This document shows positions 21,675 to 60,060 of a stretch of DNA of 64,000 bases, piece after piece; position 1 is the stretch's first letter; each line of letters opens with the position of its first letter. The stretch lies in the NCBI RefSeq assembly GCF_022045235.1, contig NW_027266272.1, forward strand, positions 13,268,001 through 13,332,000, read 5' to 3'. Under the pieces are notes generated by a model, which saw only the letters and a list, made by a program, of their open reading frames with translations, did no database searches and had not been told where the DNA came from. Source of the stretch: Haliotis cracherodii. Lineage: Eukaryota. Position numbers and translations under genes: made by a program.

Positions 21675-21734
21675 TGAATTTTTTTTGCAATTATTTTTTG
21701 TTTTTTAATTCTTCAAATCTTACACAGTAAAGAT

Positions 21735-21952
21735 TGTTTCTTGTCTAACGCCGCACTCAGCAATATTCCAGCTGTATGACAGCGGTCTGGACCAGACAAT
21801 CCAGTGATTGACATCATGAGCATCGATCTACACAATTGGGATACGATGACATGCATCAACCAAGTCAGCAAGCCTGACCATCCGATCCCGTTAGGCGCCC
21901 CTTACAAGCATGTGTTGCTGAAGACCAATTTTAAATCGGATCTTCTAAGGGT
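21735..21952 (-). mobile_element. SINE family 2
   Basis: Reverse-complement consensus match. Confidence 0.8.
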
Positions 21953-22280
21953 GGCACACATGTCACGTGACCTGCGACGTGCTCACATTCATTGTTAGAG
22001 CTCATCAGCTGACAACTTTAGACTATGAATGAGCAACATAACACTGATTACGGCACACTCATAACATATACAATAACACTAACTAAGGCACACTCATGAT
22101 ATGTAAAATAACACTGACTAAGGCACACTGGTTCCCGTTCATAAACTGATAGAGGGTCACAGATGGCATAGTGGTCTAAGGCGACGCATTTCACATTATG
22201 ATCCGATCATCACTGTACAACTGACATAGTTAAATGCCGGGTAAGACTAGGAACGATGGTTTAACTACTCGTAGCTTAAC

Positions 22281-25005: not shown

Positions 25006-25137
25006 NNNNNNNNNNNNNNNNNNNNNNNNNNNNNNNNNNNNNNNNNNNNNNNNNNNNNNNNNNNNNNNNNNNNNNNNNNNNNNNNNNNNNNNNNNNNNNN
25101 NNNNNNNNNNNNNNNNNNNNNNNNNNNNNNNNNNNNN
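25006..25137. other. assembly gap (132 N)
   Basis: Run of n. Confidence 1.
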
Positions 25138-28179: not shown

Positions 28180-28453
28180 CACCCTTCAAGATCCGGGGTA
28201 GAATAGGTCTTCAGCAACTTATGCTTGCCGTAACAGGCGGCTATGCTTGTCCTAAGAGGCGACTAACGGGATCGGGTGGTCAGGCTAGATGATTTGATTG
28301 ATGCATGTCATCGTATCCCCATTGCGTAGATCGAGTCTCATGATATTTACAGACTACCACTACCACTACTACTACTACCACTACTACTACTACTACTACT
28401 ACATATAGCTTGAATATTGCTGAGTGCGGCGTTAAACAACAAACAAACAAAAC
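28180..28453 (+). mobile_element. SINE family 2 nested in the tail of an old family 3 copy (about 28010-28490), with an internal (CTA)n tract
   Basis: TSD agaaatactgtt at 28168 and 28454. Confidence 0.88.
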
Positions 28454-30639: not shown

Positions 30640-30902
30640 GTTGTTTTGTATGTTTGATGTTTAACACCGCAGTCAGCAATATTACAGCTATGGGAAGGCG
30701 GTCTGTAAATAATCGAGTTTGGACCAAAGAATCCAGTGAATGACATCATGAGCATCGATCCACGAAATTAGGATACAATGACATGCATGAACCAAGTCAG
30801 CGAGCCTGACCACCCGATCCCGTTAGTCGCCTGTTACGACAAGCATAGTAGCCTTTTAGGGCAAGGATGAAGACCTATTCTATCACGGATCTTTACGGGC
30901 CG
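30640..30902 (-). mobile_element. SINE family 2
   Basis: Reverse-complement match; absent from the paralogous flank at about 36990-37030. Confidence 0.85.
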
Positions 30903-31157
30903 TACGCAGTTGTCATGTGAGGCAGGCAGACAAAACGATTCGTGAGAATGAAACCAATAACACGTCATCTTTTCCTGACACTCCTTTAGTAGACACAGAA
31001 AATGCATGTAACCCATCACATCCTGAAATTTGAATATGGCACAACTTAATTAATAAGCACAACAGTGAATCGTGAGAACAAGAAAAAAAGCTTCTAAATA
31101 CTGGGAAGAAATAGTTCTTTTTTAATGTACAGTAATATGTTATCCGGTTTCTCTCAG

Positions 31158-31354
31158 CTAAACATAAAATACGAGTTGAGAGGCTGCTGCCATGGTCACA
31201 AACACGACAAACAGAATCGTGTCTAGTCTGTCAGCAAATTCATCTTTCTTGATGGTACTGTTTCCAAATCTGTGACCTTAACCTTCTGACGGAAGTGACA
31301 AAGCAGCGCCGCCTGTCGGTGGTGAGTGTTCATGACAAGGAGTGTTGCGAGCAG
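31158..31354 (-). pseudogene. 3' remnant (end of M3, M4, stop) of a third Cys-loop receptor copy (copy C)
   Basis: Aligns to about 37231-37455 of copy A with a 25-nt frameshifting deletion in the M3-M4 loop. The upstream CDS is missing and unrelated AT-rich DNA lies in its place. Flanks are homologous to those of copy A. Confidence 0.9.
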
Positions 31355-32502
31355 TGATGGCCAGAATGATAAGCTAAACACAAAATCACTGATACGAATG
31401 TGACCAAAAAGAAATAAAGTCGGGGCTCAGCGATTCTACAACATTAATAATTCTCTCTGTGATTTTGCCTTCAGGTTAACATTAAAATAATCTACAATTA
31501 AATACAAGTTGAAGTCCAAAATCTTACAGGTTTAAATCTAAAATCGCGTTGGACGAGGGACAAGCTGTTTTATGTATGACTTTTTAAAAAAAAACCCAGG
31601 TATTCATCAAGCAAGGAAATGTGGATGAAAAGACATTTGAAATTTGTGTAAAAGTCACACTTTGTAAAAAAAGTTATCAATGTTATTATAATACCCAGTG
31701 AATAAAAAAACTGCTGTCTCGAAATAGTACTTAATAATTATTCTTATTTCCCGTCAATGCATCCTTTAAATCCCCTGTCTTCCTGTATTTTGAAAAGGTA
31801 GTCATAATATCTTTCCTTATAGCAGCAAAACGAAAATGATGAAGGACATATTGGAGATTTTGCGAAAAGTCCCCCAAAATAGATGACGGTCATGCATTTA
31901 CGTGTTATGTTATAAGGACATATTATTAGTGTTTATTTTAATTTTCATAATAATTATGTCACTAAATCTGGAACCAACTTTAGGAATGTATTTATCCGTA
32001 TTCCAATATCTTAATAAGATATGAGTTGGTATTTCTCTAGTTGCAATATCCAACTTTTAATTTCTAAATCACGACAGTGTCAAAGCATACAAATTATATA
32101 TGCCATTATTCTAGTAATCGTTTCCATCAAATAATTGGGTCCTTTTTTAAAACTGTGCAAGGTGCGATGGAGGGAGGTACAAATTGTGTGTCGTAACCGG
32201 TTCCACTAATGGTATGCGCCGCAAGCTATACACGTTTGAAGGCAACTGTAGACAGGAGTCGAGTTAAGAATATTCGTACCTGCACCGTTGAAGATTTCGA
32301 TTGCAGCACGGATCGCTATATTAGATCCAAGCCGTCTCACAATGGCACTTGTGTTGGTTTGTGCAAGTGGTAAAGGACAATTGTATGGTGATTGTAAAGT
32401 TGACTGTAGGCGCCTAAGATCGATTTGTACTAAGATTGTTCTACGCAAGTAGGCCCAGGTCAGTTAACATGCCCAATGCCGTTGTTTTGTCATACGAGGG
32501 TA

Positions 32503-32745
32503 TTGTTTGTTTGTTTGTTTAACGCCACACTCAGCAATACTCCAGCTATATGACGACAGTCTGAAAATAAACGAATCTGGACCAGGCAATCCAGTGAATG
32601 ATATCACGGGTATCCATCTACGCAATTGAGATCGATAACAAGCATCAACCAAGTCTGCGAGCCTGGCCACCAGATCCCGTTAGTCGCCTCCTACGACAAG
32701 CATAGTCGCCTCTTACGGCAAGCATGGTTGCTGAAGACCTATTCA
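32503..32745 (-). mobile_element. SINE family 2
   Basis: Reverse-complement consensus match. Confidence 0.85.
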
Positions 32746-33283
32746 CCTATTCACGTGTCCATTTACGGGCATTGAATGAACCATCAATGAGGCGATGATT
32801 TCCGTCAATGAATAGCCACGTGAGCCTGTTATTGGTTTTTGGTGTAGCGACCGATGGACAAAACTGTAATCACACGAGTGATAATGTCTATTGTGTATCC
32901 ACCATTAGAGAATGTTTGCTGGCGATTTCTGATCAATTTACTTTTCGGGAACATAATTACAGGGTTTGTCAACATGAAGTGTCCGCATTCTATGTGCTTT
33001 GTGAGAGTAAATCCAGTTTATACATTTGAATAGATGATGTTTGAATAACATGTTTCAATTATTATTTTTATCAAAACGTACTGGAGTCATGAATCACAGG
33101 AGGACCATTATAGTGCCTTTTCTACAAACAATGGATTAAGCAGGAGCATTGTTCTGAGTAGGCAACACGTGGCAGGAACGTGAGTGTAGTTGACGTCAGT
33201 TACACGTGCAGCAGAAAATGTGATATAATTACACTATGGCGTATGCCTAATGGTAACGTCAGCCACACATGCCATGTGAAATG

Positions 33284-33535
33284 TGAGTGAGTGAGTGGGT
33301 ATGGTTTTACGCCGCTTTTAGCGATATTCCAGCAATATCACGACGGCGGACACCAGAAATTGGCTTCACACATTGTACCCATGTCGGAAATCGAACCCGG
33401 GTCTTCGGCGTGACGAGCGAACACTTTAACCACTGGGCCACCCGACCGTTTCTGGTGTCCCCCGCCGTGATATTGCTGAAATATTGCTAAAAGCGGCGTA
33501 AAACCATACATACTCACTCACTCACTCACTCACTC
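33284..33535. mobile_element. inverted pair of SINE family 1 (- near-full copy fused to + 3' half)
   Basis: (gagt)n start, reverse-complement consensus to about 33447, then forward tail to (actc)n. Confidence 0.85.
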
Positions 33536-34076
33536 CATGTCAGAATGATGAGATCTAAATGGTCTACGTCGTCTTTATAAAATAGTGTGTAACCCGCTGG
33601 AGGGAAATACATTTCTCATGAGGGAAATAAATATATTTTACCCCGCAATGCAGGCTGCACGTGGATTTCTGAGAGGCAGATTAAATCCCCTTTTCCCCGC
33701 TTCCAAACAAAGGTTCGCACGCTTTTTCCGAGTCTATGGAAGCCACGTGACATAGCACAAGCCGCAGCTCAATTGAACAGCTGTTTTCTATCAATTTCAA
33801 ATTTGTGTTAATTATTTTCCAATGTCACATTGAAACATGTCGGTAAGACCGGCTCGTGGTTTAAAACCGCATTAAACCCTATGTACCCCGAGTGATCCTG
33901 CTTCACCCTATAGTGTACGGAGAGGTAACAACAGCTTCACTTACTATGGGTCCAGACTAGATGATAAGGTGATCTTCACAGACCAAGTGTCGTGTGTGTA
34001 TTGTTACGAATCGATTCCCAAATTAAAACAACATGTTAACCCAGAAATCTGAGCTTAAATATAGAATACAAAACGA

Positions 34077-34194
34077 GCTCCCGTGTAATACAAATTTTAT
34101 GAAACGAGTGAATAGTTGTGGTATCTGACGAGCGAAAGCGAGTCAGATACCACAACTATTCACTCGTTTCATAAAATTGGTTTTACACGGGAGC
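34077..34194. repeat. long near-perfect palindrome
   Basis: Arms of about 53 bp (37 bp perfect) around the loop gagcgaaagcga. Confidence 0.95.
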
Positions 34195-34383
34195 GAGTTT
34201 AGTATTTTATTTATTACTGGCCATTTATAACGTTTTTAGAATTATACTATTGAGTGTGAATAGGCTGACACATACATGATCCACGGTATAATCCAACTGA
34301 GTTTAACACAGTAATACTTCAAATACGTCAAAAGTTGAAACGTATGAATTTAATACCACCCAACGGTCCACCTTTAGAATTCA

Positions 34384-34496
34384 GGCGTCCGTTCCACAAA
34401 CATATCGTAGCGTTAAGGTTATCGCAACTCATATACTTTAACTTAGACCAACGACTGTCGTCGCGCTACCGCACGATCGCCTTGTGGAACGGGGCC
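34384..34496. mobile_element. short MITE
   Basis: Inverted termini ccgttccacaa / ttgtggaacgg. Confidence 0.6.
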
Positions 34497-34877
34497 TTGC
34501 ACCTCAAAGTTTACAATCACGTCACAATACCCGATGACGTAGTTTGTGGAATTTTGTTGCAAGATCCATCGGCGAAACAATGCCATGTGACGTCAGCCTA
34601 GCAACAAGGTTTCTGGGGTCACCGTGTGTGCATAAGCTCCTCCCAGTGATCTATCATCTCCACACACAATGTCGTTGTATACGCCTAGGGATATTGAGAG
34701 CTCTCAATATTTGTTCGTGAAACGTGTTCCGAGAGTACATAAGCACGCGTTTTGGAATTACACAATGTGTAATAAAGCTGTATGTTTATTAAACGGGTGA
34801 TCTCTTCACGGGCAAGTAATAAACTAGGTTTACAAATCAACACAGCAGCTACAATTGCAGGACACAATAGAGTGGTA

Positions 34878-35143
34878 TGAGGGGCGTCAATAAGTTTTGC
34901 AACTTCAATATAAGTCCAAGTCGCAGAATATCTTTTGCACTTTTATTTTTCAATATAATCTCCATTCACCTCAATAAAATTATTCCATTTGTCCTTCAAG
35001 CTTTTAAACAACTTTTACAGGAAATAGTCACTTGGGGCTAAGTCTGGGCTGTACAGTTAAATCACCGACCCTACAGCCCAGTGACTATATTCTGCGACTT
35101 GGACTTATATTGAAGTTGCAAAGCTTATTTAACACCCCCCTCG
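34878..35143 (-). mobile_element. internally deleted mariner element (MITE)
   Basis: TIRs of about 50 bp (t/c)gagggg...gcaacttcaatataagtccaagtcgcagaatat, TA flanks; the - strand encodes YSPDLAPSDYFL and KW..FIEVNGDYIEK*. Confidence 0.92.
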
Positions 35144-36315
35144 TAGTACAATTTTAAATGGCAGTAAAATTGTGTTAATTCGTAAAATATTACGATAACA
35201 GTAAGTGAAATATCAAAATATTGAAAAACAGAATCCATGTCCCTTATGGGCCACCGTACTTGAACATCACAGAATATTCCACGTGTTTCTTTAACCCTTA
35301 ACATCCATCCATGCTATTTCAGAAGATTAGTGATAATTCGAGCATCTTAATACTAGTATACATGCTATTTCAGAAGATTAGTGATAACTCGAGCATCTAA
35401 ATACAATAACTGCCTCAACACTGCTTATATTAAATAGGACTACATTCCTAACAACTAATCATTATTCAAATACAATGCAATGAATCTCAACAGAAACAAT
35501 GTAATGCAGTTACAATCATTGTTTAATAATAAATAACACTGCCATATAACAGTATGTATTTGATGGCAAAAAAGCTTCACAGATCAATATATATTTGCAT
35601 TGTAGGGGCTGAACAGGCCACGTGATTTGCGTATTTCTGCTAGCTTTAACGGGACACGTGACTTGAGCGTTGCTGTCAGAACCGGTCCTATTCCTGGTCC
35701 AATCAAGGAGGAAGGGACACAACAAGCTTTTAACAATGTAACACACCTACAGTTCAGAATGAGGGATTCACTATTGCTTAACGTACATCATCAATATTGC
35801 TGCTGTTCTAAACCAAGGGACAGAAGTCCATCTATGTCTAAAATCAATAGTCATTATGCTGTTGAATGACGTCTCTTATACACACTTTGTTGTTGGTACT
35901 AACAGCGTGTGACCGTGGACGTTTTACTAACAAATGGTCAAACAGAACACGTGTTAACACAAAACTGCTCGTATCAATACTGACATGTATATAAGGGCGA
36001 AACCGCATTATCGGTGGTTCGAGAAGGGAGCTATTTCCAGGCTTATATCGCTATGATTAGATTGATGTGTTATACTGGAATAAGTAGAATGAGTGGTATT
36101 GCCTCTGTAATTTGATTTAAAGTAGATCTATGTTTCTTGCTTTGTAGCTATTTTTGCAAAACTGGTGTGGTCAGCTATGATAACGTTATTCAAACTTCAA
36201 AGACTTTGTGTGCCTTTCATGGAATTAACGTCACACTAAATAATTTATAAAGATATTTCCCATCAATATGACAAAATGAGAATAATATATAATGTCACAT
36301 ACCCATGCAAAGTCA

Positions 36316-36670
36316 TGACAAATGTGAGCCCACTACCCTAAATGACTTAGTCAACCCAATGAAGCCCAGCGATTTACAAATGTGGGCCCACCTGTTTCGA
36401 TCACTATAAGACGGAAACAATGTGGGCCCACATTTTAGAAATGGCTATAAGTAAGGCAGGCTAATGAAGCTTAGCGATTTATAAATGTGGTCCCTCCTGT
36501 TGTAATCACTATGACGGAAGAACGTCTGCCCACATTTAGGAATTGATTATCAGAACTCATTAAACAACCTATCGAAGCTAGGCGAAATACAAATGTGGGC
36601 CCACTTGTTTCGATCACCATATATGACGGGGAAAATGTGGGCCCACATTTTAGACAATGGTTATCAGCAC
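36316..36670. repeat. degenerate tandem repeat with aaatgtgggcccac core
   Basis: Motif recurs about 7 times in roughly three larger units. Confidence 0.7.
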
Positions 36671-37230
36671 TAAACCAATCTAAGAAGACGTACGGATGGA
36701 AACATACATATAAAATGCATTCCAACATTTAATTAAGAATACGTTTTACCTTAGGGATAAGCTGGGCATTAAATAGCTGGACCAACAACGAACAGCGTGA
36801 CTGACACCATTTCTCGCAAATACGAAACAACGGAGATTGCTCCCGTTTGAAATTAGAGTGACCTCCCTTCCCCAATATGAACCTCTGATATTACGGTTTC
36901 GCGTATATAAGACATAATTTCAGCCTGTTGGCTACCTGAAAATGGATACACTGTTGAGCTGTTTAGATCATTTGTCTTTTACCGTCAATTGATTGAATGA
37001 ATATATTATGTGAGCCAGTTGATAAGAGAGATTCGACATAATGAAACCAATAACACGCCATCTTTAGTGACACTCCTTTAGTAGACACAGAAAATGCAAG
37101 TGACCAATCGCATCCTTAAACGCGAATATGGCACATCTAAATTAATAAGCACAACAGTGAATCGTGAGAACAAGAAGATTACTAATTGTTTAGCAAATAG
37201 TTCAATTTGGTGTAATCCGGTTTCTCTCAG

Positions 37231-38376
37231 CTAAACATAAAATACGAGTATAGAGGCTGCTGCCATGGTCACAAACATGACAAACAGAATCTTGTCTAGT
37301 CTGTTAGCAGCTTCATCTTTCTGGATGCCACTGAGTTCATTCCAAGCACTGGGTTTATTGTCCAAATCTGTAACCTTGACCTTCTTACTGAAGCGGCAAA
37401 GCAACGCCCCCTGTCGGTGGTGAGTGTTTATGACCAGGAGAGTGGCGAGCAGAGCCAGGGCGCTCTGTGACAGAAGCAGAACCAGATAGATGGTGAGGCG
37501 GGAGGCATTGCCGGACTTGGGGATAGCGTCATTGATGTAGTTGAGGAACACTGCTCCAGACACGAAGATGGAGACGAGGAAGGAGATCTTTTCCCCCGAG
37601 GCCGCGGGCAGCAGGAATACACAGGCGTTGAGGAAGGAGAGAAGACACATTGGAAAGATGACGCTTAGGGTGTAGAAGATGCTGTGACGCCGGAGTCGGA
37701 ACTTGACATCAATATAAGGTAAAGCGTCGTAGAATGCATGAAAGTGCTTCTCGTGGAATGTAGTGTTGACCAACTCCCACTCACTGCTGCCAGTGAAATA
37801 TGCAGAGAAAATATCACTAAGGCCTTGACTACGCAAATAAAGTCTTGAGTCTAATAAGCCGAGAAATGACATGTGACACTCCTGTTCATCATATGGATAC
37901 CTTGTCACATCTAAATTGCAAATTGTCTCAAATTCATCAATTATAAACATCAATGTCGTTCCAGTAGAACGTACATTGATAGGCATACTTGCGGTTAAGG
38001 AGGAAATCTTGTTACCCACAGCGTTTGGAATTATAAAGTTTGGAGTCCATATCTCTTCAGACTTAAAGGCAAGGCTTTCGACACCGTTGGTGTTGTTCCA
38101 CGTCAGCCATGGATCCTTCCAAGACATAGTCAGAGAGCCACTGAGACGAAATATCTGACTGGCTTCTTCCACAGCTACAACAGCTATGGGGGCGAAGGAC
38201 AATGATACATTGACGCGGTTGCCCGTCCCATAGGGCGACACCGTGGTGGAGTAGTTGTACAGGAGATCCTGCTTCAGTTGCTGCTGTCGCCGTCTCTCAG
38301 GGTCCGCTTCACCATGGCAACAGCTCAACAAACTAATACAACATACAATCCAAGCCGTATCTTTAAGATTGCCCAT
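37231..38376 (-). CDS. divergent nAChR-like Cys-loop ligand-gated cation channel subunit, single coding exon (copy A), 381 aa
   Basis: Signal peptide, WKDPWLTW, IWTP, Cys-loop CNLDVTRYPYDEQEC, SSEW, LRR, four TM helices, SGEKIS at the M2 start. No vicinal CC in loop C. A splice acceptor (ttttatag) lies 9 nt upstream of the ATG, suggesting a 5'UTR intron only. Confidence 0.95.
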   Translation of the reverse strand: MGNLKDTAWIVCCISLLSCCHGEADPERRRQQQLKQDLLYNYSTTVSPYGTGNRVNVSLSFAPIAVVAVEEASQIFRLSGSLTMSWKDPWLTWNNTNGVESLAFKSEEIWTPNFIIPNAVGNKISSLTASMPINVRSTGTTLMFIIDEFETICNLDVTRYPYDEQECHMSFLGLLDSRLYLRSQGLSDIFSAYFTGSSEWELVNTTFHEKHFHAFYDALPYIDVKFRLRRHSIFYTLSVIFPMCLLSFLNACVFLLPAASGEKISFLVSIFVSGAVFLNYINDAIPKSGNASRLTIYLVLLLSQSALALLATLLVINTHHRQGALLCRFSKKVKVTDLDNKPSAWNELSGIQKDEAANRLDKILFVMFVTMAAASILVFYV

Positions 38377-38477
38377 GTCTTACGTCTATAAAATAATCAA
38401 AGGTGATATTAATTTTGTCTGTACAGAACCACACTAGCAACACACCGTGAGAACACGAAGTACGCACACTTGATAAT

Positions 38478-38788
38478 CAGGGGAAGATCCTGTTTCTGAT
38501 GAACATGAAGTCTGTACTGTCAATGTACAGGGAAAGATCCCGTTTCTGGTGAACACGAAGACTGTACTGTCAATGTACAGGGAGAGATCCTGTTTCTGGT
38601 GAACACGAAGACTGTACTGTCAATGCACAGGGAGAGATCCTGTTTCTGATGAACACGAAGTCCGTACTGCCAATGTCCAGGGAAAGATCCTGTTTCTGAT
38701 GAACACGAAGTCCGTACTGCCAATGTACAGGGAGAGATCCTGTTTCTGATGAACACGAAGTCCGTACTGCCAATGTCCAGGGAGAGAT
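38478..38788. repeat. 50-bp minisatellite, about 6 copies, just upstream of receptor copy A
   Basis: caatgtacagggagagatcctgtttctg(a/g)tgaacacgaag.c.gtactg(t/c). Confidence 0.95.
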
Positions 38789-39518
38789 GCTGTCGTCTAG
38801 CCACACACCAGGAGTGCTGCAATGCCTAATGTCGTCGTTTTTTTCATACGCGGGTATTAAATAAAAGCTGCAGGGGACAATGAGTTTCGTCAATGAATTG
38901 CCACGTGCGCCTTTTATTTGCCTTGATCTGTAGAGAACAATGGACAAAACAGGAGCCAACACGGGCGACAATGACTATTGTTTATTCGCCATTAGAGAAA
39001 GTTTACTGGCGATGTATTGGGCATCAATTGTTTTACGGACACATAATTACAGATTGTTTTCAACAGGAAGCATTCACATTCTAGAAGCACTATGACAACA
39101 AAACGGTTCCTTTAGTCAAATAATAATTTGAATAGAAGATGTTTAAATAAAATGTTAATAGTTAATGTTTTTTAGTGTAGAAGTACTAAAGACGTTCATC
39201 ATCAGAGGAGTTTGGTTAGAACCTTTCGGGTACATTTTACCGTGTTATACAAACGATGGAATTGGCAAACATCATTGTTCGGAGTTATACAGCACGTGTA
39301 GGCGTCACGTTGGCAGCAATGTGAGGCTATTTGATGTCAGTTACCACGTGCAGCAGAGTGGAATATGTGATATAATTACACTATGGCGTGTCAGCTTATG
39401 TTGGACGAAAGCCCCAAGGACGCATGTCCTCAACGTTTATCACTTACGTAAATTCACGCGCTCGGGTATGAACTACCCCCGAGGATCGAGTGGTCAGGCT
39501 CGGCGACGTGGCTGAAAG

Positions 39519-39764
39519 CTTTGTTTGTTTGTTTGTTTGTTGGGTTGTTTTACGCCGCACTCAGCAATATGACGGCGGTCTGTAAATAATCGAGTTTGGA
39601 CCAGACAATCCAGTGATTAACATCATGAGCATCGATTGGGATTGGGATTGATGACAGCGAGCCTAACCACCCGAAACCCGTTTGTCACCTCTTACAACAT
39701 ACAGTCGCCTTTTACGGCAAGCATGGGTTGCTGGGGACCTACTCTACCCCGGAACTAACGGGCC
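39519..39764 (-). mobile_element. SINE family 2
   Basis: Reverse-complement consensus match. Confidence 0.85.
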
Positions 39765-39872
39765 TGAAAGCTTGGTATTGTATCCCGACGGCGAGGATCG
39801 TTGATCACACTGTCAGTGAGCTTTTTAGTCTGTTCCAGAACCGATTAGTTACAAGTCATCGTCGTAGAGCTG

Positions 39873-39985
39873 AAACATCAACAACAACAAAGTGCAACAT
39901 CAACAACAACAAAGTGCAACATCAACAACAACAAAGTGCAACAACAACAACACCAACAAAGAGAAACAAACAACATCAACAAAGA
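39873..39985. repeat. (CAA)-rich short tandem repeat
   Basis: aacatcaacaacaacaaagtgc x3. Confidence 0.85.
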
Positions 39986-40620
39986 AGACACGTCACGTAT
40001 CACTCAAATGTCTACACTGTCTAGTTTTACACTGGATATGTAGTTGCTAAGTATTAAGCGATATGATATTTTGAAATATTTTAAACAAACTGATGAAAAA
40101 TTCCTTGTCCTTTCAATAAGCAAATTTGTTTGTATCATATTTTTACGTAAAGGAACATCAGTGCTTAACGTACCAGTATGATAAACTGATTAATTTCCAT
40201 TCAGCTAAACCGTTCAAATATTCAGTTAAAACCTTGTGTTGTTGCTATTATAAAACTATATCGTAATTGGTGTATTATAGGGCGTTTGGTCACATTAGAC
40301 GGAATTAACAAATATTATGCACGTGAAACTGATGCAACTATAGGTCATTATGTAAATTATAGAGAAATAATATATCAGCCATGACACTCGAATATATGGG
40401 TTCTTGAAGTGGAATCAACGAGCCCCGATTCTCATAATGTCTCCATAATCTGATGTCGGTATTTCACTTTTGTGTATTTTTGGAAAGGTTTTTATCGGGT
40501 CATATATTTAAACTTTATGCTTTAATTAAAAAAGAATATGAGAGACTGTTCATTGATTTTAGGGTTAGATTAATGCCCCTTCGCCTCAAATGCCTATGGC
40601 ATTCTTTCATGACACATGTC

Positions 40621-40871
40621 GACCCGTGAAGATCCGGGGTAGAATAGGTCTTCAGCAATCTATTCATGCCGTAAAAGGTGACTAACGGGATCGGGTGGTC
40701 AGGCTGGTTGACTTGGTTGATGCATGTCATCGTATCCCAATTGCGTGGATCGATGCTCATGATGTCAATAACTGGATTGTCTGGTTCAGACTCGATTATT
40801 TACAGAATGCCGTCATATAGCTGTAATACTGCTGAGTGCGGCGTTAAACAACAAACAAACAAACAAACAAA
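40621..40871 (+). mobile_element. SINE family 2, full length, single-hairpin variant
   Basis: TSD tcatgacac(a/g)tgtc. Confidence 0.9.
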
Positions 40872-41368
40872 TCATGACACGTGTCGCTCTCAGTGAAAAG
40901 TGTAGATATATCAGTAACGCACCTAAACCTTTCCCTGACAACGACAGCTGTATCGGCCAAAACACCTACGCTTACAACAAAGAAACCATGGCAACGAGTC
41001 CGGAATTATACATAACGAGTACGCATATTGGCTTATCATATGTAACTCCATCTTGCTAAAACGTGGTAGAAATGAAAGGGATTCAAGTATTAAACAGACA
41101 CTGTTCTCTAGCGGTAGAGGTTTTGTAAGTCTACATCGTTCTGCTTGTAAAGCAAACACGTTTTTGTGTTAAGTGATCGCGTGATCGACGTGTGCTATTA
41201 GAGAGAGTAGTTAATAAACGATACGCTCAAGTCATATATAATTTCTCTGCACAGGCCTGAGGCGTGGAACCTTTTGCCAATAACTCCGGAGTTTGCATTA
41301 CAATGTATTCAACTGAAGTAATTTCGCGTGTCACGTACTAGTCTGCACAGTTGTACGAAAGCCTCACG

Positions 41369-41543
41369 TTGCCACTTTTGGTAGCATAGTTGTTGTTTTT
41401 CAATTTCGATTCCTTTTTCTTCATTTCGATTATTTTCATGGCATTCAAAGTTTGAAAAATCGAAAGTTCGAAAAATTACACAAATAATTGAAGTAACGAG
41501 ATATTTCGATGTAAAAAAATATAATTATGCTACCAAAGTGGCA
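41369..41543. mobile_element. small inverted-repeat element
   Basis: tgccactt(t)tggtagcata / tatgctaccaaagtggca. Confidence 0.55.
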
Positions 41544-41903
41544 CCATTATTGTTTGGGTGCAGTAGCAAACAGGTGCTTCACCTGTGTCATCGACATGGT
41601 ATGTATGGAACTTATCATGCATTATTACCTGTGTATGGATGAGTGAGTGAGTTGGGCTTAACGTCGGACTGAACAGTATTCTAGTTATATCACGACGTGT
41701 CAGCTTCATGTAAAGGAAAACCCCGAAGTGGTGCAGGTCTCAGACATTTACCGATTTGTTTAAATATGGAAACAAACTGCGAACAGTAGGATCGTTGTAA
41801 CAATTTATACATATCAAGAAGAAGTTTAACTTCGGGATTGCCCTTAGATAGTAGTTAAAGAACAGAGGATCAAATGATTTTACTTCTGTAACAGTTCTTT
41901 TTA

Positions 41904-44900
41904 TCTATACCCACTGACAACACAATCTTCTCCACTGTGTGACATGTGGTTCTATACCTAATGACAACACTATCTTCTCCACTGACTGTGTGACATGTGG
42001 TTCTGTACCCACTGACAACACTATCTTCTCCACTGATTGATTGACGTGAGGTTCTATACCTAATGACAACACTATCTTCTGCACTGACTTTGTGACGTGT
42101 GGTTCTATACCCACTGACAACACTATCTACTGCACTGACTGTGTGACGTGTGGTTCTATACCCACTGACAACACTATCTTCTCCACTATGTGACATGTGG
42201 TTCTATACCCACTGACAACACTATTTTCTCCACTGACTGTGTGACGTGAGGTTCTATACCCACTGACAACACTATCTACTGCACTGACTGTGTGACGTGT
42301 GGTTCTATACCCACTGACAACACTATCTACTGCACTGACTGTGTGACATGTGGTTCTATACCCACTGACAACACTATCTACTGCACTGACTGTGTGACGT
42401 GTGGTTCTATACCCACTGACAACACTATCTTCTCCACTGACTGTGTGACGCGAGGTTCTATACCCAATGATAACACTATCTACTGCACTGACTGTGTGAC
42501 GTGTGGTTCTATACCCACTGACAACACTATATTCTCCACTGATTGTGTGACGTGTGGTTCTATACCCCCTGACAACACTATCTTCTCCACTGACTGTGTG
42601 ACGTGTGGTTCTATACCCACTGACAACACTATCTACTGCACTGACTGTGTGACGTGTGGTTCTATACCCACTGATAACACTATATTCTCCACTGATTGTG
42701 TGACGTGTGGTTCTATACCCACTGACAACACTATCTTCTCCACTGACTGTGTGACATGTGGTTCTATACCCACTGACAACACTATCTACTGCACTGACTG
42801 TGTGACGTGTGGTTCTATACCCACTGACAACACTATCTACTGCACTGACTATGTGACGTGAGGTTCTATACCCACTGACAACACTATCTTCCCCACTGAC
42901 TGTGTGAGGTGTGGTTCTATACCCACTGACAACACTATCTTCTGCACTGACTGTGTGACGTGTGGTTCTATACCCACTGACAAAACTATCTTCTCCACTA
43001 TGTGACGTGTGGTTCTATACCCACTGACAACACTATCTTCTCCACTGACTGTGCGAGGTGTGGTTCTATACCCACTGACAACACTATCTTCAGCACTGAC
43101 TGTGTGACGTGAGGTTCTATACCCACTCACAACACTATCTTCTCCACTGACTGTGTGACGTGTGGTTCTATACCCACTGACAACACTATCTTCTCCACTG
43201 ACTGTGTGACGTGTGGTTCTATACCCACTGACAACACTATCTACTGCACTGACTGTGTGACGTGTGGTTCTATACCCACTGACAACACTATCTACTGCAC
43301 TGACTGTGTGACGTGAGGTTCTATACCCACTGACAACACTATCTTCTCCACTGACTGTGTGACATGTGGTTCTATACCCACTGACAACACTATCTACTGC
43401 ACTGACTGTGTGACGTGTGGTTCTATACCCACTGACAACACTATCTTCTCCACTGACTGTGTGACGCGAGGTTCTATACCCACTGACAACACTATCTACT
43501 GCACTGACTGTGTGACGTGTGGTTCTATACCCACTGACAACACTATATTCTCCACTGATTGTGTGACGTGTGGTTCTATACCCACTGACAACACTATCTT
43601 CTCCACTGACTGTGTGACGTGTGGTTCTATACCCACTGACAACACTATCTACTGCACTGACTGTGTGACGTGTGGTTCTATACCCACTGACAACACTATC
43701 TACTGCACTGACTGTGTGACGTGTGGTTCTATACCCACTGACAAAACTATCTTCTCCACTATGTGACGTGTGGTTCTATACCCACTGACAACACTATCTT
43801 CTCCACTGACTGTGCGAGGTGTGGTTCTATACCCACTGACAACACTATCTTCTCCACTGACTGTGTGACGTGTGGTAATATACCCACTGACAACACTATC
43901 TTCTGCACTGATTGTGTGACGTGTGGTTCTATACCCACTGACAAAACTATCTTCTCCACTATGTGACGTGTGGTTCTATACCCACTGACAACACTATCTT
44001 CTCCACTGACTGTGCGAGGTGTGGTTCTATACCCACTGACAACACTATCTTCTCCACTGATTGTGTGACGTGAGGTTCTATACCCACTGACAACACTATA
44101 TTCTCCACTATGTGACATGTGGTTCTATACCCACTGACAACACTATCTACTGCACTGACTGTGTGACGTGTGGTTCTATACCATCTCACAACACTATCTT
44201 CTCCACTGACTGTGTGAGGTGTGGTTCTATACCCACTGACAACACTATCTTCTCCACTGATTGTGTGACGTGTGGTTCTATACCCACTGACAACACTATC
44301 TACTGCACTGACTGTGTGACGTGTGGTTCTATACCCACTGACAACACTATCTACTGCACTGACTGTGTGACGTGTGGTTCTATACCCACTGACAACACTA
44401 TCTTCAGCACTGACTGTGTGACATGAGGTTCTATACCCACTCACAACACTATCTTCTGCACTGACTGTGTGACGTGTGGTTCTATACCAACTGACAACAC
44501 TATCTTCTCCACTGATTGTGTGACGTGAGGTTCTATACCCACTGACAACACTATATTCTCCACTATGTGACATGTGGTTCTATACCCACTGACAACACTA
44601 TCTACTGCACTGACTGTGTGACGTGTGGTTCTATACCATCTCACAACACTATCTTCTCCACTGACTGTGTGAGGTGTGGTTCTATACCCACTGACAACAC
44701 TATCTTCTCCACTGATTGTGTGACGTGAGGTTCTATACCCACTGACAACACTATATTCTCCACTGACTGTGTGACGTGTGGTTCTATACCCCCTGACAAC
44801 ACTATCTTCTCCACTGACTGTGTGACGTGTGGTTCTATACCCACTGACAACACTATCTTCTCCACTGATTGTGTGACGTGTGGTTCTATACCCACTGACA

Positions 44901-45500
44901 ACACTATCTTCTCCACTGACTATGTGACATGTGGTTCTATACCCACTGACAACACTATCTACTGCACTGACTGTGTGACGTGTGGTTCTATACCATCTCA
45001 CAACACTATCTTCTCCACTGACTGTGTGACGTGTGGTTCTATACCCACTGACAACACTATCTTCTCCACTGATTGTGTGACGTGAGGTTCTATACCCACT
45101 GACAACACTATATTCTCCACTGACTGTGTGACGTGTGGTTCTATACCCACTGACAACACTATTTTCTCCACTGATTGTGTGAAGTGAGGTTCTATACCCA
45201 CTGACAACACTATCTTCTCCACTGACTGTGTGACGTGAAGTTCTATACCCACTGACAACACTGGGTATAGAACCTCACGATCTTCTCCACTGTGTGACAT
45301 GTGGTTCTGTACCAACTGAAAACACTATGTTCTCTTCTGACTGTGTGACGTGTGGTTCTATATCCAATGATAACACTATCTTCTGCACTGACTGTGTGAC
45401 GTAAGGTTCTATACCCACTAAAACGCTATCTTCTGCACTGACTGTGTGACGTGAGGTTCTATACCCACTGACAACACGATATTCTCCGCTGACCGTGTGA
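41904..45500. repeat. 51-bp satellite (about 70 copies, with 47-bp variants) between the two intact receptor genes
   Basis: gtgtgacgtgtggttctatacccactgacaacactatcttctccactgact. Confidence 0.98.
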
Positions 45501-45957
45501 ATATTGCTCTTTGGCTTATCGCAATACTTACTAATAAATCCATTCCTTGTGGCAAAAGAACAGGCAGTACAGAAAGTATTTACTACATTGCTTAAGTGTC
45601 AAAATGTCAAATTACAAATTGTGAATGTATAATGTGAAATGATATACTCAGTTGAAAATACTGACATTAGTGAATGGCCAGCAAGTCACAATACTACAAA
45701 AAACAACTTCTAGACATTCAATCAAACTGAGACGACATATCTTATACTGAATACATATACACTACACACGATCACACGTTGGTATTCAGAGTACTTGGAA
45801 CACGTGCAGCAATCGAGTTCAGACAGAAAAACAGTTTTAAAGCATACGTGGCTTTTAGTATCGTGTTCACAGTGGTCTTCGTCATAATATCGTATTGATG
45901 TAAGCATATTTTACAAAGTATTTACATCACATAAAGTACCAAAAGTTGTCATTTGGG

Positions 45958-46325
45958 CATTATTATTATTATCATTTACAGATTAACATAAAAAAATGCA
46001 GCAAAGAGGGTTTGGGTGATCCTGGCACAGACAGACTGGTTAGGCTCATCACCAGCTCAGGGCCCTTGCCCCTCTACAAGCATCCCAGACAGCGAATGTG
46101 ACTCCTCCCAGGAAGCGCTGCCTAAAGAAACCCACCAAGAACTTTTCGAAGAATGTGAAGACTCCCCAACACTGCAGCTTTCTGCATTAACCAGATTGTC
46201 AGAAGGGATGTATTCCTGGTAGCAAACCCGTGTTCTCTCCCAATGTCAATAAAATAATCGGGATGTTCCAAATCTAAGGCACTGAGAACAATGGGGAGTT
46301 GGGCAACTTGATAATCGAGATGCAA
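45958..46325 (-). mobile_element. 3' fragment of an RLE-type (R4/Dong-like) non-LTR retrotransposon
   Basis: PIVLSAL...MQKAAVLGSLHILRKVL* resembles the restriction-like endonuclease C-terminus; ends in (TAA)n. Confidence 0.7.
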
Positions 46326-46512
46326 GCGTTACATTTCGAAAGCGGGGTCTGCATATTTGCCATGTTTTTCCTGAATCTTGTCAATCACATTAGTGTCCAA
46401 AGGGACAAAAGATTCAGACATATTATTATTAAAATCTGGCCACCAGCCACTGTATAATGAAATGTTGAAAACAAAACGTTTATCACAATACCACAGTGAC
46501 TGGTATGTTATG

Positions 46513-47646
46513 CTATATACGAAACACAAGTATTGAGAGTGCGGCCATCAACACAAACAGGACAAACATAATTTTATCGAGTCTGTCTGCTGCTTCATCG
46601 TTCTTGATATCATCGCCTCTCTCCAATGGACTTGTGCTTTGAACTGCGATCTTCTTACGGAGGCGACAAAGCAACGCTCCCTGTCGGTGGTGAGTGTTTA
46701 TGACCAGGAGAGTGGCGAGCAGAGCCAGGGCGCTCTGTGACAGAAGCAGAACCAGATAGATGGTGAGGCGGGAGGCAATGCCGGACTTGGGGATAGCGTC
46801 ATTGATGTAGTTGAGGAACACTGCTTCGGACACGAAGATGGAGACGAGGAAGGAGACCTTCTCCCCCGAGGCCGCGGGCAGCAGGAATACACAGGCGTTG
46901 AGGAAGGAGAGAAGACACATTGGAAAGATGACGCTTAGGGTGTAGAAGATGCTGTGACGCCGTAGTCGGAATTCGAGATCAACGTACGGAATACGGTCAG
47001 CGACTCGTTTAACGCTAATGGTTTTGTTAACCAAATCCCATTCACTGCTACCAGTAAAGTATGTAGAAAAAATGTTGGTATATTCTTGATTTCCCAGTCC
47101 AAAATCTGAGGAGTTTAACAAACTGATAACAGTTATGCGACACACCTGTTCATCATAAGGATACCGTACCACATCCAAATTACAAATTGTCTCAAATTCA
47201 TTAATCATGAACATGATTGCCGTGCCAGAATGGTCAACGGAGATGGGCACACTTGCGGACAAAGAGGAAATCTTGCTACCTACACCGTTTGCAATCACGA
47301 TCTTCGGGGTCCATATCTCCTCAGGTTCAAATTCAAGCTTTTCGATATCATTGCTCCTGTCCCATGTCAACCAAGGATCCGTCCAAGACAAAGTCAGAGC
47401 GCCACTTAAGCGGAATATCTGATTGGCTTCTTCCACGGCTATCACAGCTATGACAGCGAATGACACAGAGACCATGACCCGACTTGCCGTTCCTTTGGGC
47501 GACACCGTGGTGGAGTAGTTGTACAGGAGATCCTGCTTCAGTCGTTGCTGTCGTCGTCTCTCAGGGTCCGCTTCACCATGGCAACATCTCAACAAAAACA
47601 CCACGGACAACATCAAAGCAGCATAGTTGAATAGAACACTCTGCAT
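46513..47646 (-). CDS. divergent nAChR-like Cys-loop ligand-gated cation channel subunit, single coding exon (copy B), about 377 aa
   Basis: Paralogue of copy A: Cys-loop CNLDVVRYPYDEQVC, SGEKVS, four TM helices. Start placed at ATG 47646 (MQSVLFNYAALMLSVVFLLRCCHG) because it gives a signal peptide aligned with copy A; the ORF track extends to 47736. Confidence 0.93.
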   Translation of the reverse strand: MQSVLFNYAALMLSVVFLLRCCHGEADPERRRQQRLKQDLLYNYSTTVSPKGTASRVMVSVSFAVIAVIAVEEANQIFRLSGALTLSWTDPWLTWDRSNDIEKLEFEPEEIWTPKIVIANGVGSKISSLSASVPISVDHSGTAIMFMINEFETICNLDVVRYPYDEQVCRITVISLLNSSDFGLGNQEYTNIFSTYFTGSSEWDLVNKTISVKRVADRIPYVDLEFRLRRHSIFYTLSVIFPMCLLSFLNACVFLLPAASGEKVSFLVSIFVSEAVFLNYINDAIPKSGIASRLTIYLVLLLSQSALALLATLLVINTHHRQGALLCRLRKKIAVQSTSPLERGDDIKNDEAADRLDKIMFVLFVLMAALSILVFRI

Positions 47647-58800: not shown

Positions 58801-60060
58801 ATGACTCAACACAGGACACTTGTCTCAATGACTCAACACAGAACACTTGTCTCAACACAGTACACTTGTCTCAATGACTCAACACAGGACACTTGTCTCA
58901 ATGTCTCAACACAGTACACTTGTCTCAATGTCTCATACACGTCATACCTTCCTTGTAATCTTCCTCAAATTTCTTTTTCTGGTGAGCTCGGAGTTTGGTA
59001 ACCTTTGACCCTGCCAGGAAGAAAACCAGCAGGGCAGAGAAGAAACACAGACTGCTGAGTGTCAGGATGAATCCAACTAACAACCCTGGAATTACAGAGG
59101 TTACCAGGGTAACAGGTAACCAAACATGGAATACATTGAGGGGTAGCTGAAAAGTTCCGAGTCAAACTATGATGGACAGCTTTGATGGCGTTGGTTGCTG
59201 AATATTTTTCAACATAATCCCCTCCAAGGTCCACACACTTTTGCCACAGATGCTGGAATGTCTTCCCAGTTAGGCGCAAAACTTTTCAGCCCCCCTCGTA
59301 TTAATTTCTTTAAAATGATTCTATAGACTAAGGCTAAAAAAAATAATAGTCTTGGTTCTCAGGTACCGCCCGCATCATCATAGAGAGTGACACGTTTTGG
59401 TTTTTTTTCTATGTAAAAAACTCCAAAACAACAAAATCCTTAAATATTCCAAGTCAAACGGTAGTCAAATACCGTATTCCAGTATTTTACTCATCAACGA
59501 ATACATTCTTGTAGGGAGGCCCTTTCCCAAATTGATTGTACACAACTGTTTATTTGGTTACATATTAGTTTGAACAATCCCTCACAAAAAAAAACACACC
59601 GTCCCCCCACACTATATTTTCAAAAGCCATTGCCTGAGAACCAGTTCTTTTACTTTTTGAAGCCTAATGTTGCAGTCTTTAAACATTTGTGTGTTCCAAG
59701 AAAGGGACAGTACCTGCCACAGCACCGGACACATCCAGGCTCCTCTTCCTCAGCCCATACAGTGCAATGAGAACCGGAGCAATGGCTGCCACTAACCACC
59801 TCCAGGGGGCTGGGGCCGCATAGTCTGTAACCATGGTAACAGTTAGGTAGCAGGGACCACTAAGGGGTGAGGGGGAGTACTTGGGACCATTTCACTTTTA
59901 CATTCTACATTTAAAGGTTTCAACCATAATACATTGCTCTACAGAGTCAAATATGGAACAATACCAGCAAATAGGATTTCATAAGTGCTGTGCAAGATTT
60001 CATAGTTTATTCAAAAACATTTCATTTGAAGACTTATTTTTTTTCTTTTGATAATTTGTA

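What the first reader, a model, noticed from the sequence alone, without database searches (positions are those of the whole stretch)
31158..47646. Tandem cluster of intronless nAChR-derived channels lacking the acetylcholine site: candidate chemotactile-like sensory receptor family
Seen: two intact single-coding-exon Cys-loop subunits and one decayed copy, in the same orientation within about 16 kb. Aligned by eye to alpha7 nAChR, loop A Tyr becomes Pro (A) or Ala (B), loop B Trp becomes Leu in both, and loop D Trp becomes Ser or Ala. Loop C lacks the vicinal Cys-Cys, differs in length between copies and clearly keeps only the distal PY tyrosine. The M3-M4 loop is only about 40 aa and the GEK cation filter is retained. 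Established: cephalopod chemotactile receptors are intronless, tandemly arrayed, nAChR-derived cation channels lacking the ACh cage, and expansions of nAChR-like genes are reported in other molluscs. Inference: these are orphan non-ACh receptors undergoing birth and death, plausibly contact chemoreceptors in a lineage that may not be cephalopod.
Basis: partly seen in the sequence, partly recalled or inferred. Interest (0 to 1): 0.88.

Follow-up and report, generated by a model that had tools for sequence, protein, structure and literature searches.

The report
Abalone orphan nicotinic-like channel gene pair
Two intact intron-free genes and one broken copy in the black abalone genome encode nicotinic-receptor-like ion channel subunits that have lost the acetylcholine-binding residues, but they are a small locus within an already described mollusc-wide expansion of over 100 such genes, and a taste-by-touch role remains untested.

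Summary
Window 37231-38376(-) (A, 381 aa) and 46513-47646(-) (B, 377 aa) are complete single-ORF Cys-loop subunits. They keep the Cys-loop, four TM helices and the SGEK cation filter. They lack the loop D Trp, loop A Tyr, loop B Trp and the loop C Cys-Cys. The third copy is only a frameshifted 74-codon 3' remnant, its first ~307 codons replaced by a dispersed repeat.

The genome is Haliotis cracherodii. It holds at least 104 intact intronless paralogues in 36 loci. None has the Trp-Tyr-Trp triad or a vicinal Cys pair, so the loss is the norm here. A, B and a third gene 2.9 Mb away form a Haliotis-specific subfamily with H. asinina orthologues. All 13 clusters with a named member among the 20 nearest checked are gastropod. 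Octopus CRT1 scores below alpha7, and against A also below 5-HT3A.

New here: the M1-M3 block is homogenised by gene conversion while the ligand-binding domain diverges under purifying selection.

The tissue of expression is unknown and the chemosensory role is untested. Intronless tandem expansions with unconserved ACh sites were published in 2019, and the chemosensor idea in a 2026 preprint. This scan noted a similar array elsewhere in this genome (s1-820425), with the same verdict. It is a new member of a known kind.

The parts
37231..38376 (-). Gene A: complete single-ORF nAChR-like Cys-loop subunit, 381 aa (signal peptide, LBD, M1-M4, short M3-M4 linker)
   Evidence: ORF. Pfam PF02931 and PF02932. 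AlphaFold2 model with pLDDT 90.9 and pTM 0.81, full pLGIC fold. Best structural matches are alpha7 and muscle nAChR.
46513..47646 (-). Gene B: complete single-ORF paralogue, 377 aa from the ATG (open frame continues to a TTG at 47736)
   Evidence: ORF. Pfam. 70% aa and 80% nt identity to A, with the homology confined to the CDS.
37411..37701 (-). M1-M3 block of A (residues 226-322), homogenised with B and with the third paralogue
   Evidence: A and B differ at 6/291 nt here, against 151/594 in the LBD. Four-fold sites differ at 2/57 against 25/54 (Fisher 7e-8). No such deficit is seen against distant paralogues. Residues in the block are shared by the paralogues of one species and differ between species.
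46681..46971 (-). M1-M3 block of B (residues 226-322), the counterpart of the conversion tract
31161..31357 (-). Pseudogene fragment: remnants of codons 308-343 and 349-381 in two frames (one frameshift near 31250-31259)
   Evidence: tblastn. About 77% nt identity to the 3' end of A.
30915..31160 (-). 3' flank of the pseudogene, collinear with the 3' flank of A (37008-37230)
   Evidence: blastn
31360..32460 (.). About 1.1 kb dispersed repeat occupying the place where codons 1-307 of the pseudogene should lie
   Evidence: No similarity to A or B. About 40 long matches at 72-81% identity across the genome, 78 rows in all, a lower bound.
32766..33242 (-). 5' flank of the pseudogene, collinear with the upstream flank of A (38851-39389)
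   Evidence: blastn at 71-83% identity
38481..38793 (.). 50-bp x 6.3 tandem repeat about 105 bp upstream of the ATG of A
   Evidence: TRF
41904..45262 (.). 51-bp x 66 minisatellite filling much of the A-B intergenic space. It produces the long spurious ORFs there.
   Evidence: TRF; ORF list

Best explanation
A and B are functional genes for subunits of pentameric, cation-selective Cys-loop channels of nicotinic ancestry. Their orthosteric pocket has been rebuilt so that it cannot bind acetylcholine in the canonical way.

They belong to a small Haliotis-specific subfamily: A, B and a third gene 2.9 Mb away. That subfamily is nested in a gastropod radiation of at least 104 intact intronless orphan nAChR-like genes in this genome. 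This is the known lophotrochozoan expansion by retroposition and tandem duplication.

Within the subfamily the pore-forming M1-M3 block is kept nearly identical by gene conversion. The extracellular domain, and loops B, F and C most of all, diverges under purifying selection. Inferred mechanism: a common channel core carrying different ligand-binding domains, gated by one or more non-acetylcholine ligands, as homomers or as mixed pentamers of these paralogues.

The third copy is a later duplicate of the A locus. It was killed when a dispersed repeat replaced most of its coding sequence.

Shown here: gene integrity, fold, loss of the ACh residues, family context, selection, gene conversion, and the anatomy of the pseudogene. 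Inferred: channel function, cation selectivity, a non-ACh ligand, and co-assembly. Where the genes act (sensory epithelium, neurons or elsewhere) is unresolved.
For: Integrity and fold:
- Intact ORFs with both Pfam domains.
- A confident full pLGIC model (pLDDT 90.9), closest to alpha7 and muscle nAChR structures.
- Cys-loop, -1' Glu (SGEK) and 20' Asp kept.

Loss of the ACh site:
- W55, Y93, W149 and the vicinal Cys pair are all replaced.

Selection and orthology:
- Whole-gene dN/dS for A-B is 0.19/0.43. In the LBD, windows over codons 41-220 give ratios of about 0.14-0.40.
- Intact or partial orthologues of A and B exist in H. asinina. The 7-row subfamily clade has SH-aLRT 100.

Family context:
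- 0 of 104 intact intronless paralogues have the triad or a Cys-Cys pair, and 99 of 104 keep the -1' Glu.
- The 108 matches fall in 36 loci. The two largest arrays hold 16 and 13 matches.

Gene conversion:
- Four-fold sites differ at 2/57 in M1-M3 against 25/54 in the LBD (p = 7e-8).
- The deficit is also seen with the paralogue 2.9 Mb away, but not with distant paralogues.
- RRHS and NTHH occur in all three H. cracherodii paralogues. RRLS or QRLS and NIHH occur in all three H. asinina ones.

Expression:
- Contigs from two RNA-like runs of related species cover the CDS of A but not most unique intergenic bins (X2 also has low-depth contigs in two of them).

Literature:
- Intronless tandem nAChR expansions with unconserved ACh sites (PMC6896357).
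- Divergent clades with altered binding residues (PMC13174522).
Against: - There is no functional or tissue data.
- The RNA status of the runs is a guess, and a run labelled as the same species showed no contig on the gene.
- The 9' pore residue is Val, not Leu. This is as in the vertebrate accessory subunits alpha5 and beta3 (fish alpha5 rows), so an accessory role is possible.
- Related orphan receptors such as Alpo4 have resisted every attempt at activation (PMC10338036). The channels might need partners or chaperones, or might not be ligand-gated in the usual sense.
- Pairwise dN/dS is crude, and no site-level test of selection was possible.
Confidence: 0.62

Rival explanations
1. A and B are peripheral contact or distance chemoreceptors, analogous to cephalopod chemotactile receptors. 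They would be expressed in tentacles, epipodium, osphradium or larval sensory cells and gated by environmental, possibly hydrophobic, molecules.
For: - They share the CR syndrome: intronless, tandem, ACh residues lost, short intracellular loop, cation filter kept.
- The pocket residues are now Pro, Leu, Ala, Leu and Ser in place of aromatics, so the pocket is more aliphatic.
- Pairing a variable LBD with a constant pore fits a sensor family.
- A preprint explicitly proposes such divergent gastropod clades as ionotropic chemosensors (PMC13174522).
Against: - No tissue information.
- The syndrome is shared by all 104 intact intronless paralogues in this genome. In bivalves such genes are expressed in embryos, gonad and immune or stress responses (PMC6896357), so the syndrome does not predict a sensory role.
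- The subfamily has only three genes with old, stable orthologues, not a rapidly expanding repertoire.
- LBD dN/dS is about 0.14-0.40, with no sign of positive selection.
- No specific similarity to CRT1.
Confidence: 0.2
2. A and B are accessory (structural, fifth-position type) subunits. They would co-assemble with canonical ACh-binding abalone nAChR subunits and tune conductance, desensitisation or trafficking without binding a ligand themselves.
For: - The 9' residue is Val, as in vertebrate alpha5. The fish alpha5 rows P0014 and P0016 show V at that column.
- RefSeq names some subfamily members 'alpha-5-like'.
- Neither face of the ACh site is present.
Against: - Vertebrate alpha5 keeps W55, Y93 and W149, whereas A and B lose all three.
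- 44 of the 104 paralogues share 9' Val. That is too many, and their LBDs too variable, for a simple structural role.
- The gene-converted TMD is shared only within the subfamily, not with other clades. This points to partners inside the subfamily.
Confidence: 0.12
3. A and B are neutrally drifting retrocopies or duplicates, not yet disabled and without function.
For: - One neighbouring copy is already dead.
- More intron-poor than intron-rich molluscan nAChR genes show no or low expression (PMC6896357).
- A run labelled as the same species shows no contig on the gene.
Against: - Both ORFs are intact although synonymous divergence is 0.43 overall and up to more than 1 in the LBD.
- dN/dS is well below 1 outside the intracellular loop.
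- Orthologues are retained in H. asinina.
- All structural hallmarks are conserved, and the fold is predicted with high confidence.
- RNA-like contigs of related species cover the CDS.
Confidence: 0.05

Closest known systems
Lophotrochozoan/molluscan expansion of intronless, tandemly arrayed nAChR genes (BMC Genomics 2019, PMC6896357)
   Same: - Single-exon genes in same-strand tandem arrays.
- Lineage-specific clades.
- LBD-plus-TM architecture.
- ACh principal-site residues mostly not conserved.
- Pseudogenised copies present.
   Different: - That study did not include abalone.
- Here the count is at least 104 intact copies in a vetigastropod. None of them has the canonical triad.
- Here the subfamily also shows a gene-converted M1-M3 block.
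Cephalopod chemotactile receptors CRT1 and CRB1 (van Giesen 2020; Allard 2023; Kang 2023; PDB 8EIS and 9E6B)
   Same: - nAChR-derived, intronless and tandem.
- ACh aromatic residues lost.
- Short protein of about 380-410 aa.
- Cation channel hallmarks kept.
   Different: - No specific sequence or structural affinity. CRT1 scores 76 and 92 bits, against 110-119 for alpha7, and is not among the Foldseek rows returned.
- Every named nearest relative is a gastropod.
- The published CR clade is predominantly cephalopod (PMC13174522).
- Sensory expression and hydrophobic-ligand gating are not shown here.
Alpo4, an orphan nAChR-like receptor of the annelid Alvinella pompejana (eLife 2023, PMC10338036; PDB 8BX5)
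   Same: - A lophotrochozoan orphan Cys-loop subunit from the same kind of expansion.
- No vicinal Cys pair.
- Not expected to respond to ACh.
   Different: Alpo4 keeps the aromatic residues (F103, W159, Y199, Y205, W65), whereas A and B have lost loops A, B and D aromatics. 8BX5 scores 89 bits against A.
Vertebrate accessory nAChR subunits alpha5 and beta3
   Same: Val at the 9' pore position. They contribute no ACh site of their own.
   Different: - alpha5 keeps W55, Y93 and W149.
- It has many introns and a long intracellular loop.
- It is a single conserved gene, not part of a large radiation.
Divergent and 'CR-like' molluscan nAChR clades of the MolluscaGenes preprint (PMC13174522)
   Same: Gastropod sequences with substitutions at ACh-coordinating residues, proposed as possible ionotropic chemosensors.
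   Different: The clade assignment of A and B in that scheme could not be determined here. That work is transcriptome-based and reports no gene conversion or locus anatomy.

Membership tests
Cys-loop pentameric ligand-gated ion channel, nAChR-like branch | N-terminal ligand-binding domain (PF02931) followed by the transmembrane domain (PF02932) | tested here: met
   Both domains are above the curated cut-offs in A and B.
Cys-loop pentameric ligand-gated ion channel, nAChR-like branch | Cys-loop: two Cys separated by 13 residues, with the (F/Y)P(F/Y)D core | tested here: met
   C153...C167 in A, with YPYD between them. Both Cys are conserved in all 104 paralogues.
Cys-loop pentameric ligand-gated ion channel, nAChR-like branch | Beta-sandwich ECD plus four TM helices | tested here: met
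   AlphaFold2 model with pLDDT 90.9 and helices at 233-255, 261-284, 293-333 and 351-380. Foldseek E about 1e-28 to alpha7.
Cys-loop pentameric ligand-gated ion channel, nAChR-like branch | Cation-selective M2: -1' Glu (GEK) and an acidic 20' residue | tested here: met
   SGEK with Glu262, and Asp at 20', in both A and B. Selectivity itself was not measured.
ACh-binding nAChR alpha subunit | Vicinal Cys-Cys at the tip of loop C | tested here: not met
   Ala-Leu in A and no Cys in B. 0 of 104 paralogues have it.
ACh-binding nAChR alpha subunit | Principal-face aromatics: loop A Tyr, loop B Trp, loop C Tyr pair | tested here: not met
   Y93 -> Pro/Ala and W149 -> Leu/Leu. Only the loop C Tyr residues are partly kept.
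non-alpha (complementary-face) nAChR subunit | Loop D Trp (W55 equivalent) | tested here: not met
   Ser81 in A and Ala83 in B.
Cephalopod chemotactile receptors (CRs) | Intronless coding sequence in tandem arrays | tested here: met
   Single ORFs on the same strand, with 2 intact copies and 1 fragment within 16.5 kb.
Cephalopod chemotactile receptors (CRs) | Loss of the ACh aromatic cage | tested here: met
   The feature is not diagnostic, because all 104 abalone paralogues share it.
Cephalopod chemotactile receptors (CRs) | Phylogenetic membership of the CR clade | tested here: inconclusive
   - No cephalopod sequence could be brought into a tree.
- The indirect evidence is negative. CRT1 scores below alpha7 against both genes, and below 5-HT3A against A.
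- CRT1 is not among the Foldseek rows returned.
- More than 150 cluster representatives score higher than CRT1 does.
- All 13 clusters with a named member, of the 20 checked, are gastropod.
Cephalopod chemotactile receptors (CRs) | Expression in peripheral sensory epithelium | not testable with these tools
   Only coded runs without tissue labels were available. Contigs show presence only.
Cephalopod chemotactile receptors (CRs) | Gating by poorly soluble or bitter molecules and not by ACh | not testable with these tools
   Needs electrophysiology.
Molluscan intronless tandem nAChR expansion (PMC6896357) | Intronless, tandemly duplicated, lineage-specific clades with divergent LBDs | tested here: met
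   - 108 matches in 36 loci.
- Species- and genus-level clades in the tree.
- Triad absent in 104 of 104.

The most novel reading that the evidence does not exclude
A, B and the paralogue 2.9 Mb away form mixed pentamers. They would share one gene-converted pore while presenting different ligand-binding domains. The three would serve as an abalone-specific ionotropic sensor for external cues such as food, conspecific or larval settlement signals. That would be an independent, non-cephalopod recruitment of nAChR descendants into chemosensation. From memory, as a lead only: the receptor for the coralline-alga settlement cues of abalone larvae has never been identified molecularly.
Probability: 0.15. 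Interest if true: 0.7.

Novelty: new member of a known kind. Interest (0 to 1): 0.3.

Why it matters
If these channels were shown to be sensory, they would extend the recruitment of neurotransmitter receptors as chemoreceptors from cephalopods to gastropods. They would also give abalone aquaculture and conservation a molecular handle on feeding or settlement cues. As it stands, the locus adds a vetigastropod example to a published mollusc-wide expansion. The most useful new detail is mechanistic. Within one small subfamily the pore block is kept identical by gene conversion while the ligand-binding domain diverges. This 'constant core, variable sensor' pattern can be looked for across the other 35 loci and in other molluscs.

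Tried and rejected
- **Phylogeny with cephalopod CRs.** I tried to fetch cephalopod sequences with a profile search of the word-indexed protein database. Only 15 hits came back and none was cephalopod. The exhaustive representative search returns only the top 150, and CRT1-level scores lie below that cut. PDB sequences cannot be imported as references. No tree with CRs was built, so the CR-clade question rests on score comparisons and the literature.
- **Tissue of expression.** The one run search and the one read-laying run gave only Logan contigs of coded runs without tissue labels. These show presence in RNA-like runs of related species, not level or tissue.
- **ESM Atlas look-alikes** returned only generic nAChR clusters.
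- **General synonymous-site constraint on M1-M3.** I considered this as an alternative to gene conversion and rejected it. Against distant paralogues the block is as saturated as the LBD.
- **Third copy as a whole decayed gene.** Rejected: the middle 1.1 kb is an unrelated dispersed repeat.
- **Complex prediction.** Not run, because a pass for paralogous pLGIC domains would not separate homomers from heteromers.

Full report
**What is there.** The window is G000:C9:13268001-13332000.

Two uninterrupted minus-strand ORFs carry both Cys-loop receptor domains, PF02931 at E about 1e-31 and PF02932 at E about 6e-12:
- A, 37231-38376, 381 aa.
- B, 46513-47646 from its ATG, 377 aa.

tblastn of A finds one further place only: residues 308-343 at 31357-31250 and residues 349-381 at 31259-31161, in different frames. 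A and B are 70% identical in protein and 80% in DNA, and their homology stops at the CDS borders.

| alpha7 position | A | B |
|---|---|---|
| loop D W55 | Ser81 | Ala83 |
| loop A Y93 | Pro117 | Ala119 |
| loop B W149 | Leu174 | Leu176 |
| loop C C190-C191 | Ala-Leu | no Cys; loop 3 residues shorter |
| distal Pro-Tyr | kept | kept |

One correction: A also has a Tyr (Y216) at the position aligned to alpha7 Y188. By the same alignment the loop E positions L109, Q117 and L119 become Asn, Leu and Phe in A. The Cys-loop, the SGEK motif (-1' Glu) and a 20' Asp are kept. The 9' pore residue is Val rather than Leu, as in fish alpha5 in the same alignment.

An AlphaFold2 model of A, built on a 102-sequence alignment, is confident (pLDDT 90.9, pTM 0.81). 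It shows the full fold with a short M3-M4 linker. Its best PDB matches are alpha7 and muscle nAChR chains.

**Context in the genome.** A six-frame search of the whole assembly with A scored 108 of 310 candidates. All 108 matched at E of 1e-31 or better, and nearly all were single open frames of 360-490 aa. I fetched them all.

- 104 have an intact frame of at least 330 aa.
- In a joint alignment none has the W55-Y93-W149 triad and none has a vicinal Cys pair in loop C.
- 99 keep the -1' Glu.
- The 9' residue is Leu in 56, Val in 44 and Met in 4.
- The 108 matches fall into 36 loci. The largest arrays hold 16 copies (C5, 35.60-35.79 Mb) and 13 copies (C56, 12.05-12.15 Mb).

The present locus, with two genes and a fragment, is therefore a minor one. 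Its 'lack of the ACh site' is the rule in this genome, not a peculiarity.

**Relatives.** In a maximum-likelihood tree (IQ-TREE quick, LG+G4, 124 rows, rooted on canonical W-Y-W subunits), seven rows form a clade with SH-aLRT 100:
- A and B;
- a third gene at C9:16238243-16239370, which RefSeq names 'alpha-2-like';
- three H. asinina proteins.

A groups with two H. asinina proteins. The position of B relative to the third is unresolved. This clade sits inside a 68-row clade whose rows mostly carry 9' Val (SH-aLRT 100). The A/B duplication therefore predates the split of these two abalone species. This is an old, stable three-gene subfamily, not a burst.

The exhaustive search of 1.84 billion cluster representatives found 8054 relatives. 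Every cluster with a named member among the 20 top clusters checked (13 of them) is a gastropod: Haliotis, Gigantopelta, Littorina, Bulinus, Babylonia, Lymnaea, Aplysia or Batillaria.

| PDB target (phmmer bits) | against A | against B |
|---|---|---|
| octopus CRT1 (8EIS vs A, 9E6B vs B) | 76 | 92 |
| alpha7 | 119 | 110 |
| 5-HT3A | 94 | 108 |

CRT1 is also not among the Foldseek rows returned (ranks 1-49). I could not bring cephalopod CR sequences into the session. CR-clade membership is therefore formally inconclusive, but every indirect indicator is negative.

**Selection and concerted evolution.** Pairwise Nei-Gojobori estimates for A-B are dN 0.19 and dS 0.43 overall. In 40-codon windows over codons 41-220 of the LBD, dN/dS is about 0.14-0.40. 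dN is highest in the windows covering loops B, F and C (codons 161-220). The intracellular linker windows give ratios of about 0.5-1.1.

The M1-M3 block (A residues 226-322, window 37411-37701; B at 46681-46971) behaves differently.

| Comparison | nt differences, M1-M3 | nt differences, LBD | four-fold sites differing, M1-M3 | four-fold sites differing, LBD | Fisher p |
|---|---|---|---|---|---|
| A vs B | 6/291 | 151/594 | 2/57 | 25/54 | 7e-8 |
| A vs third paralogue (2.9 Mb away) | 18/291 | 205/603 | 9/56 | 27/42 | 2e-6 |

Against more distant paralogues the four-fold sites of the block are as saturated (0.57-0.64) as those of the LBD. There is thus no general synonymous constraint on this block.

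At the protein level, all three H. cracherodii paralogues share RRHS before M1 and NTHH after M3. All three H. asinina proteins share RRLS or QRLS and NIHH, although the LBD groups them by orthology. Together these results are the signature of gene conversion confined to the pore block.

**The dead copy.** The flanks of the fragment are collinear with those of A: A 37008-37452 with 30915-31354, and A 38851-39389 with 32766-33242, at 71-83% identity. B aligns with the fragment only over the coding remnant. The fragment is therefore a younger segmental duplicate of the A locus. The roughly 1.1 kb between the two flanks, where codons 1-307 should be, has no similarity to A. It belongs to a dispersed repeat with about 40 long matches at 72-81% identity. 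This supports birth and death at the locus.

**Expression.** The run search found no holder on record as RNA. I laid four runs on 35500-41400.
- Two RNA-like runs (a guess by the tool) from other organism labels hold contigs about 95% identical to the window. These cover the CDS of A: X1 at 37302-37984 and 38001-38488, X2 at 37068-37860 and 38086-38354.
- X1 leaves the unique intergenic bins empty. X2 leaves most of them empty but has low-depth contigs at 35500-35815 and 39046-39242.
- A DNA-like run covers every bin.
- A run labelled as the same species has nothing on the gene.

This suggests that orthologues are transcribed at a low level in related abalone. It says nothing about tissue.

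**Comparison with what is known.** Massive, lineage-specific expansions of intronless, tandemly arrayed nAChR genes with unconserved ACh sites were described for molluscs and annelids in 2019 (PMC6896357). An annelid orphan of this kind, Alpo4, has been solved and remains without an agonist (PMC10338036).

A 2026 preprint resolves 15 molluscan nAChR clades. It places CRs as a predominantly cephalopod clade and finds a 'CR-like' clade that includes gastropods. It explicitly proposes divergent gastropod clades as candidate ionotropic chemosensors (PMC13174522). RefSeq already annotates members of this subfamily as nAChR-subunit-like. Another agent of this scan reached the same verdict on a similar array elsewhere in this genome (s1-820425).

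**Verdict.** The genes are new members of a known kind. The one finding that goes beyond the literature I could read is the sharply bounded gene-conversion tract over M1-M3 within a three-gene subfamily, one member of which lies 2.9 Mb away. Interest 0.3.

Noticed in passing
window 41904-45262 (and 45289-45500): A 51-bp minisatellite of about 66 copies (91% matches) fills much of the A-B intergenic space. It creates long spurious ORFs on both strands.
   Followed up: partly
window 38481-38793: A 50-bp x 6.3 tandem repeat (92% matches) lies only about 105 bp upstream of the start codon of A, in the presumed promoter or 5' UTR. RNA-like contigs of a related species reach into it (X1, 38632-38758).
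   Followed up: no
window 14660-15301 (+): This ORF matches the HCO3- transporter membrane domain (PF00955, E 1e-34, profile positions 104-267). It is probably one exon of an SLC4-type anion exchanger gene in the GC-richer stretch at 10-16 kb.
   Followed up: no
window 39520-39760 and 40620-40870, with copies at 10369-10633, 19716-19963, 21734-21965, 28181-28451, 30645-30902, 32503-32705, 55853-56057 and 61085-61312: A SINE-like repeat of about 240 bp occurs at least ten times in the window. Contig depth on it is enormous in every run laid. One copy sits inside the 5' flank of the pseudogene.
   Followed up: partly
window 31360-32460: A dispersed repeat of about 1 kb with about 40 long genome matches at 72-81% identity. 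Its first ~85 bp recur in inverted orientation next to many copies, which suggests a terminal inverted repeat (possibly a non-autonomous DNA element).
   Followed up: partly
window 56580-59001: Overlapping long ORFs on both strands (741 aa and 542 aa) with strong GC skew. They give only weak, fragmentary Pfam hits. This is most likely low-complexity repeat DNA rather than a gene.
   Followed up: partly
G000:C5:35603180-35791448 and G000:C56:12051533-12147818: The two largest arrays of intronless nAChR-like matches in this genome (16 and 13 matches). Many neighbours are nearly identical (tree end branches of 0.002-0.02), so these arrays are much younger and more dynamic than the locus studied here.
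   Followed up: partly
window 25006-25137: A run of 132 N (assembly gap or masked stretch). It was left untouched.
   Followed up: no
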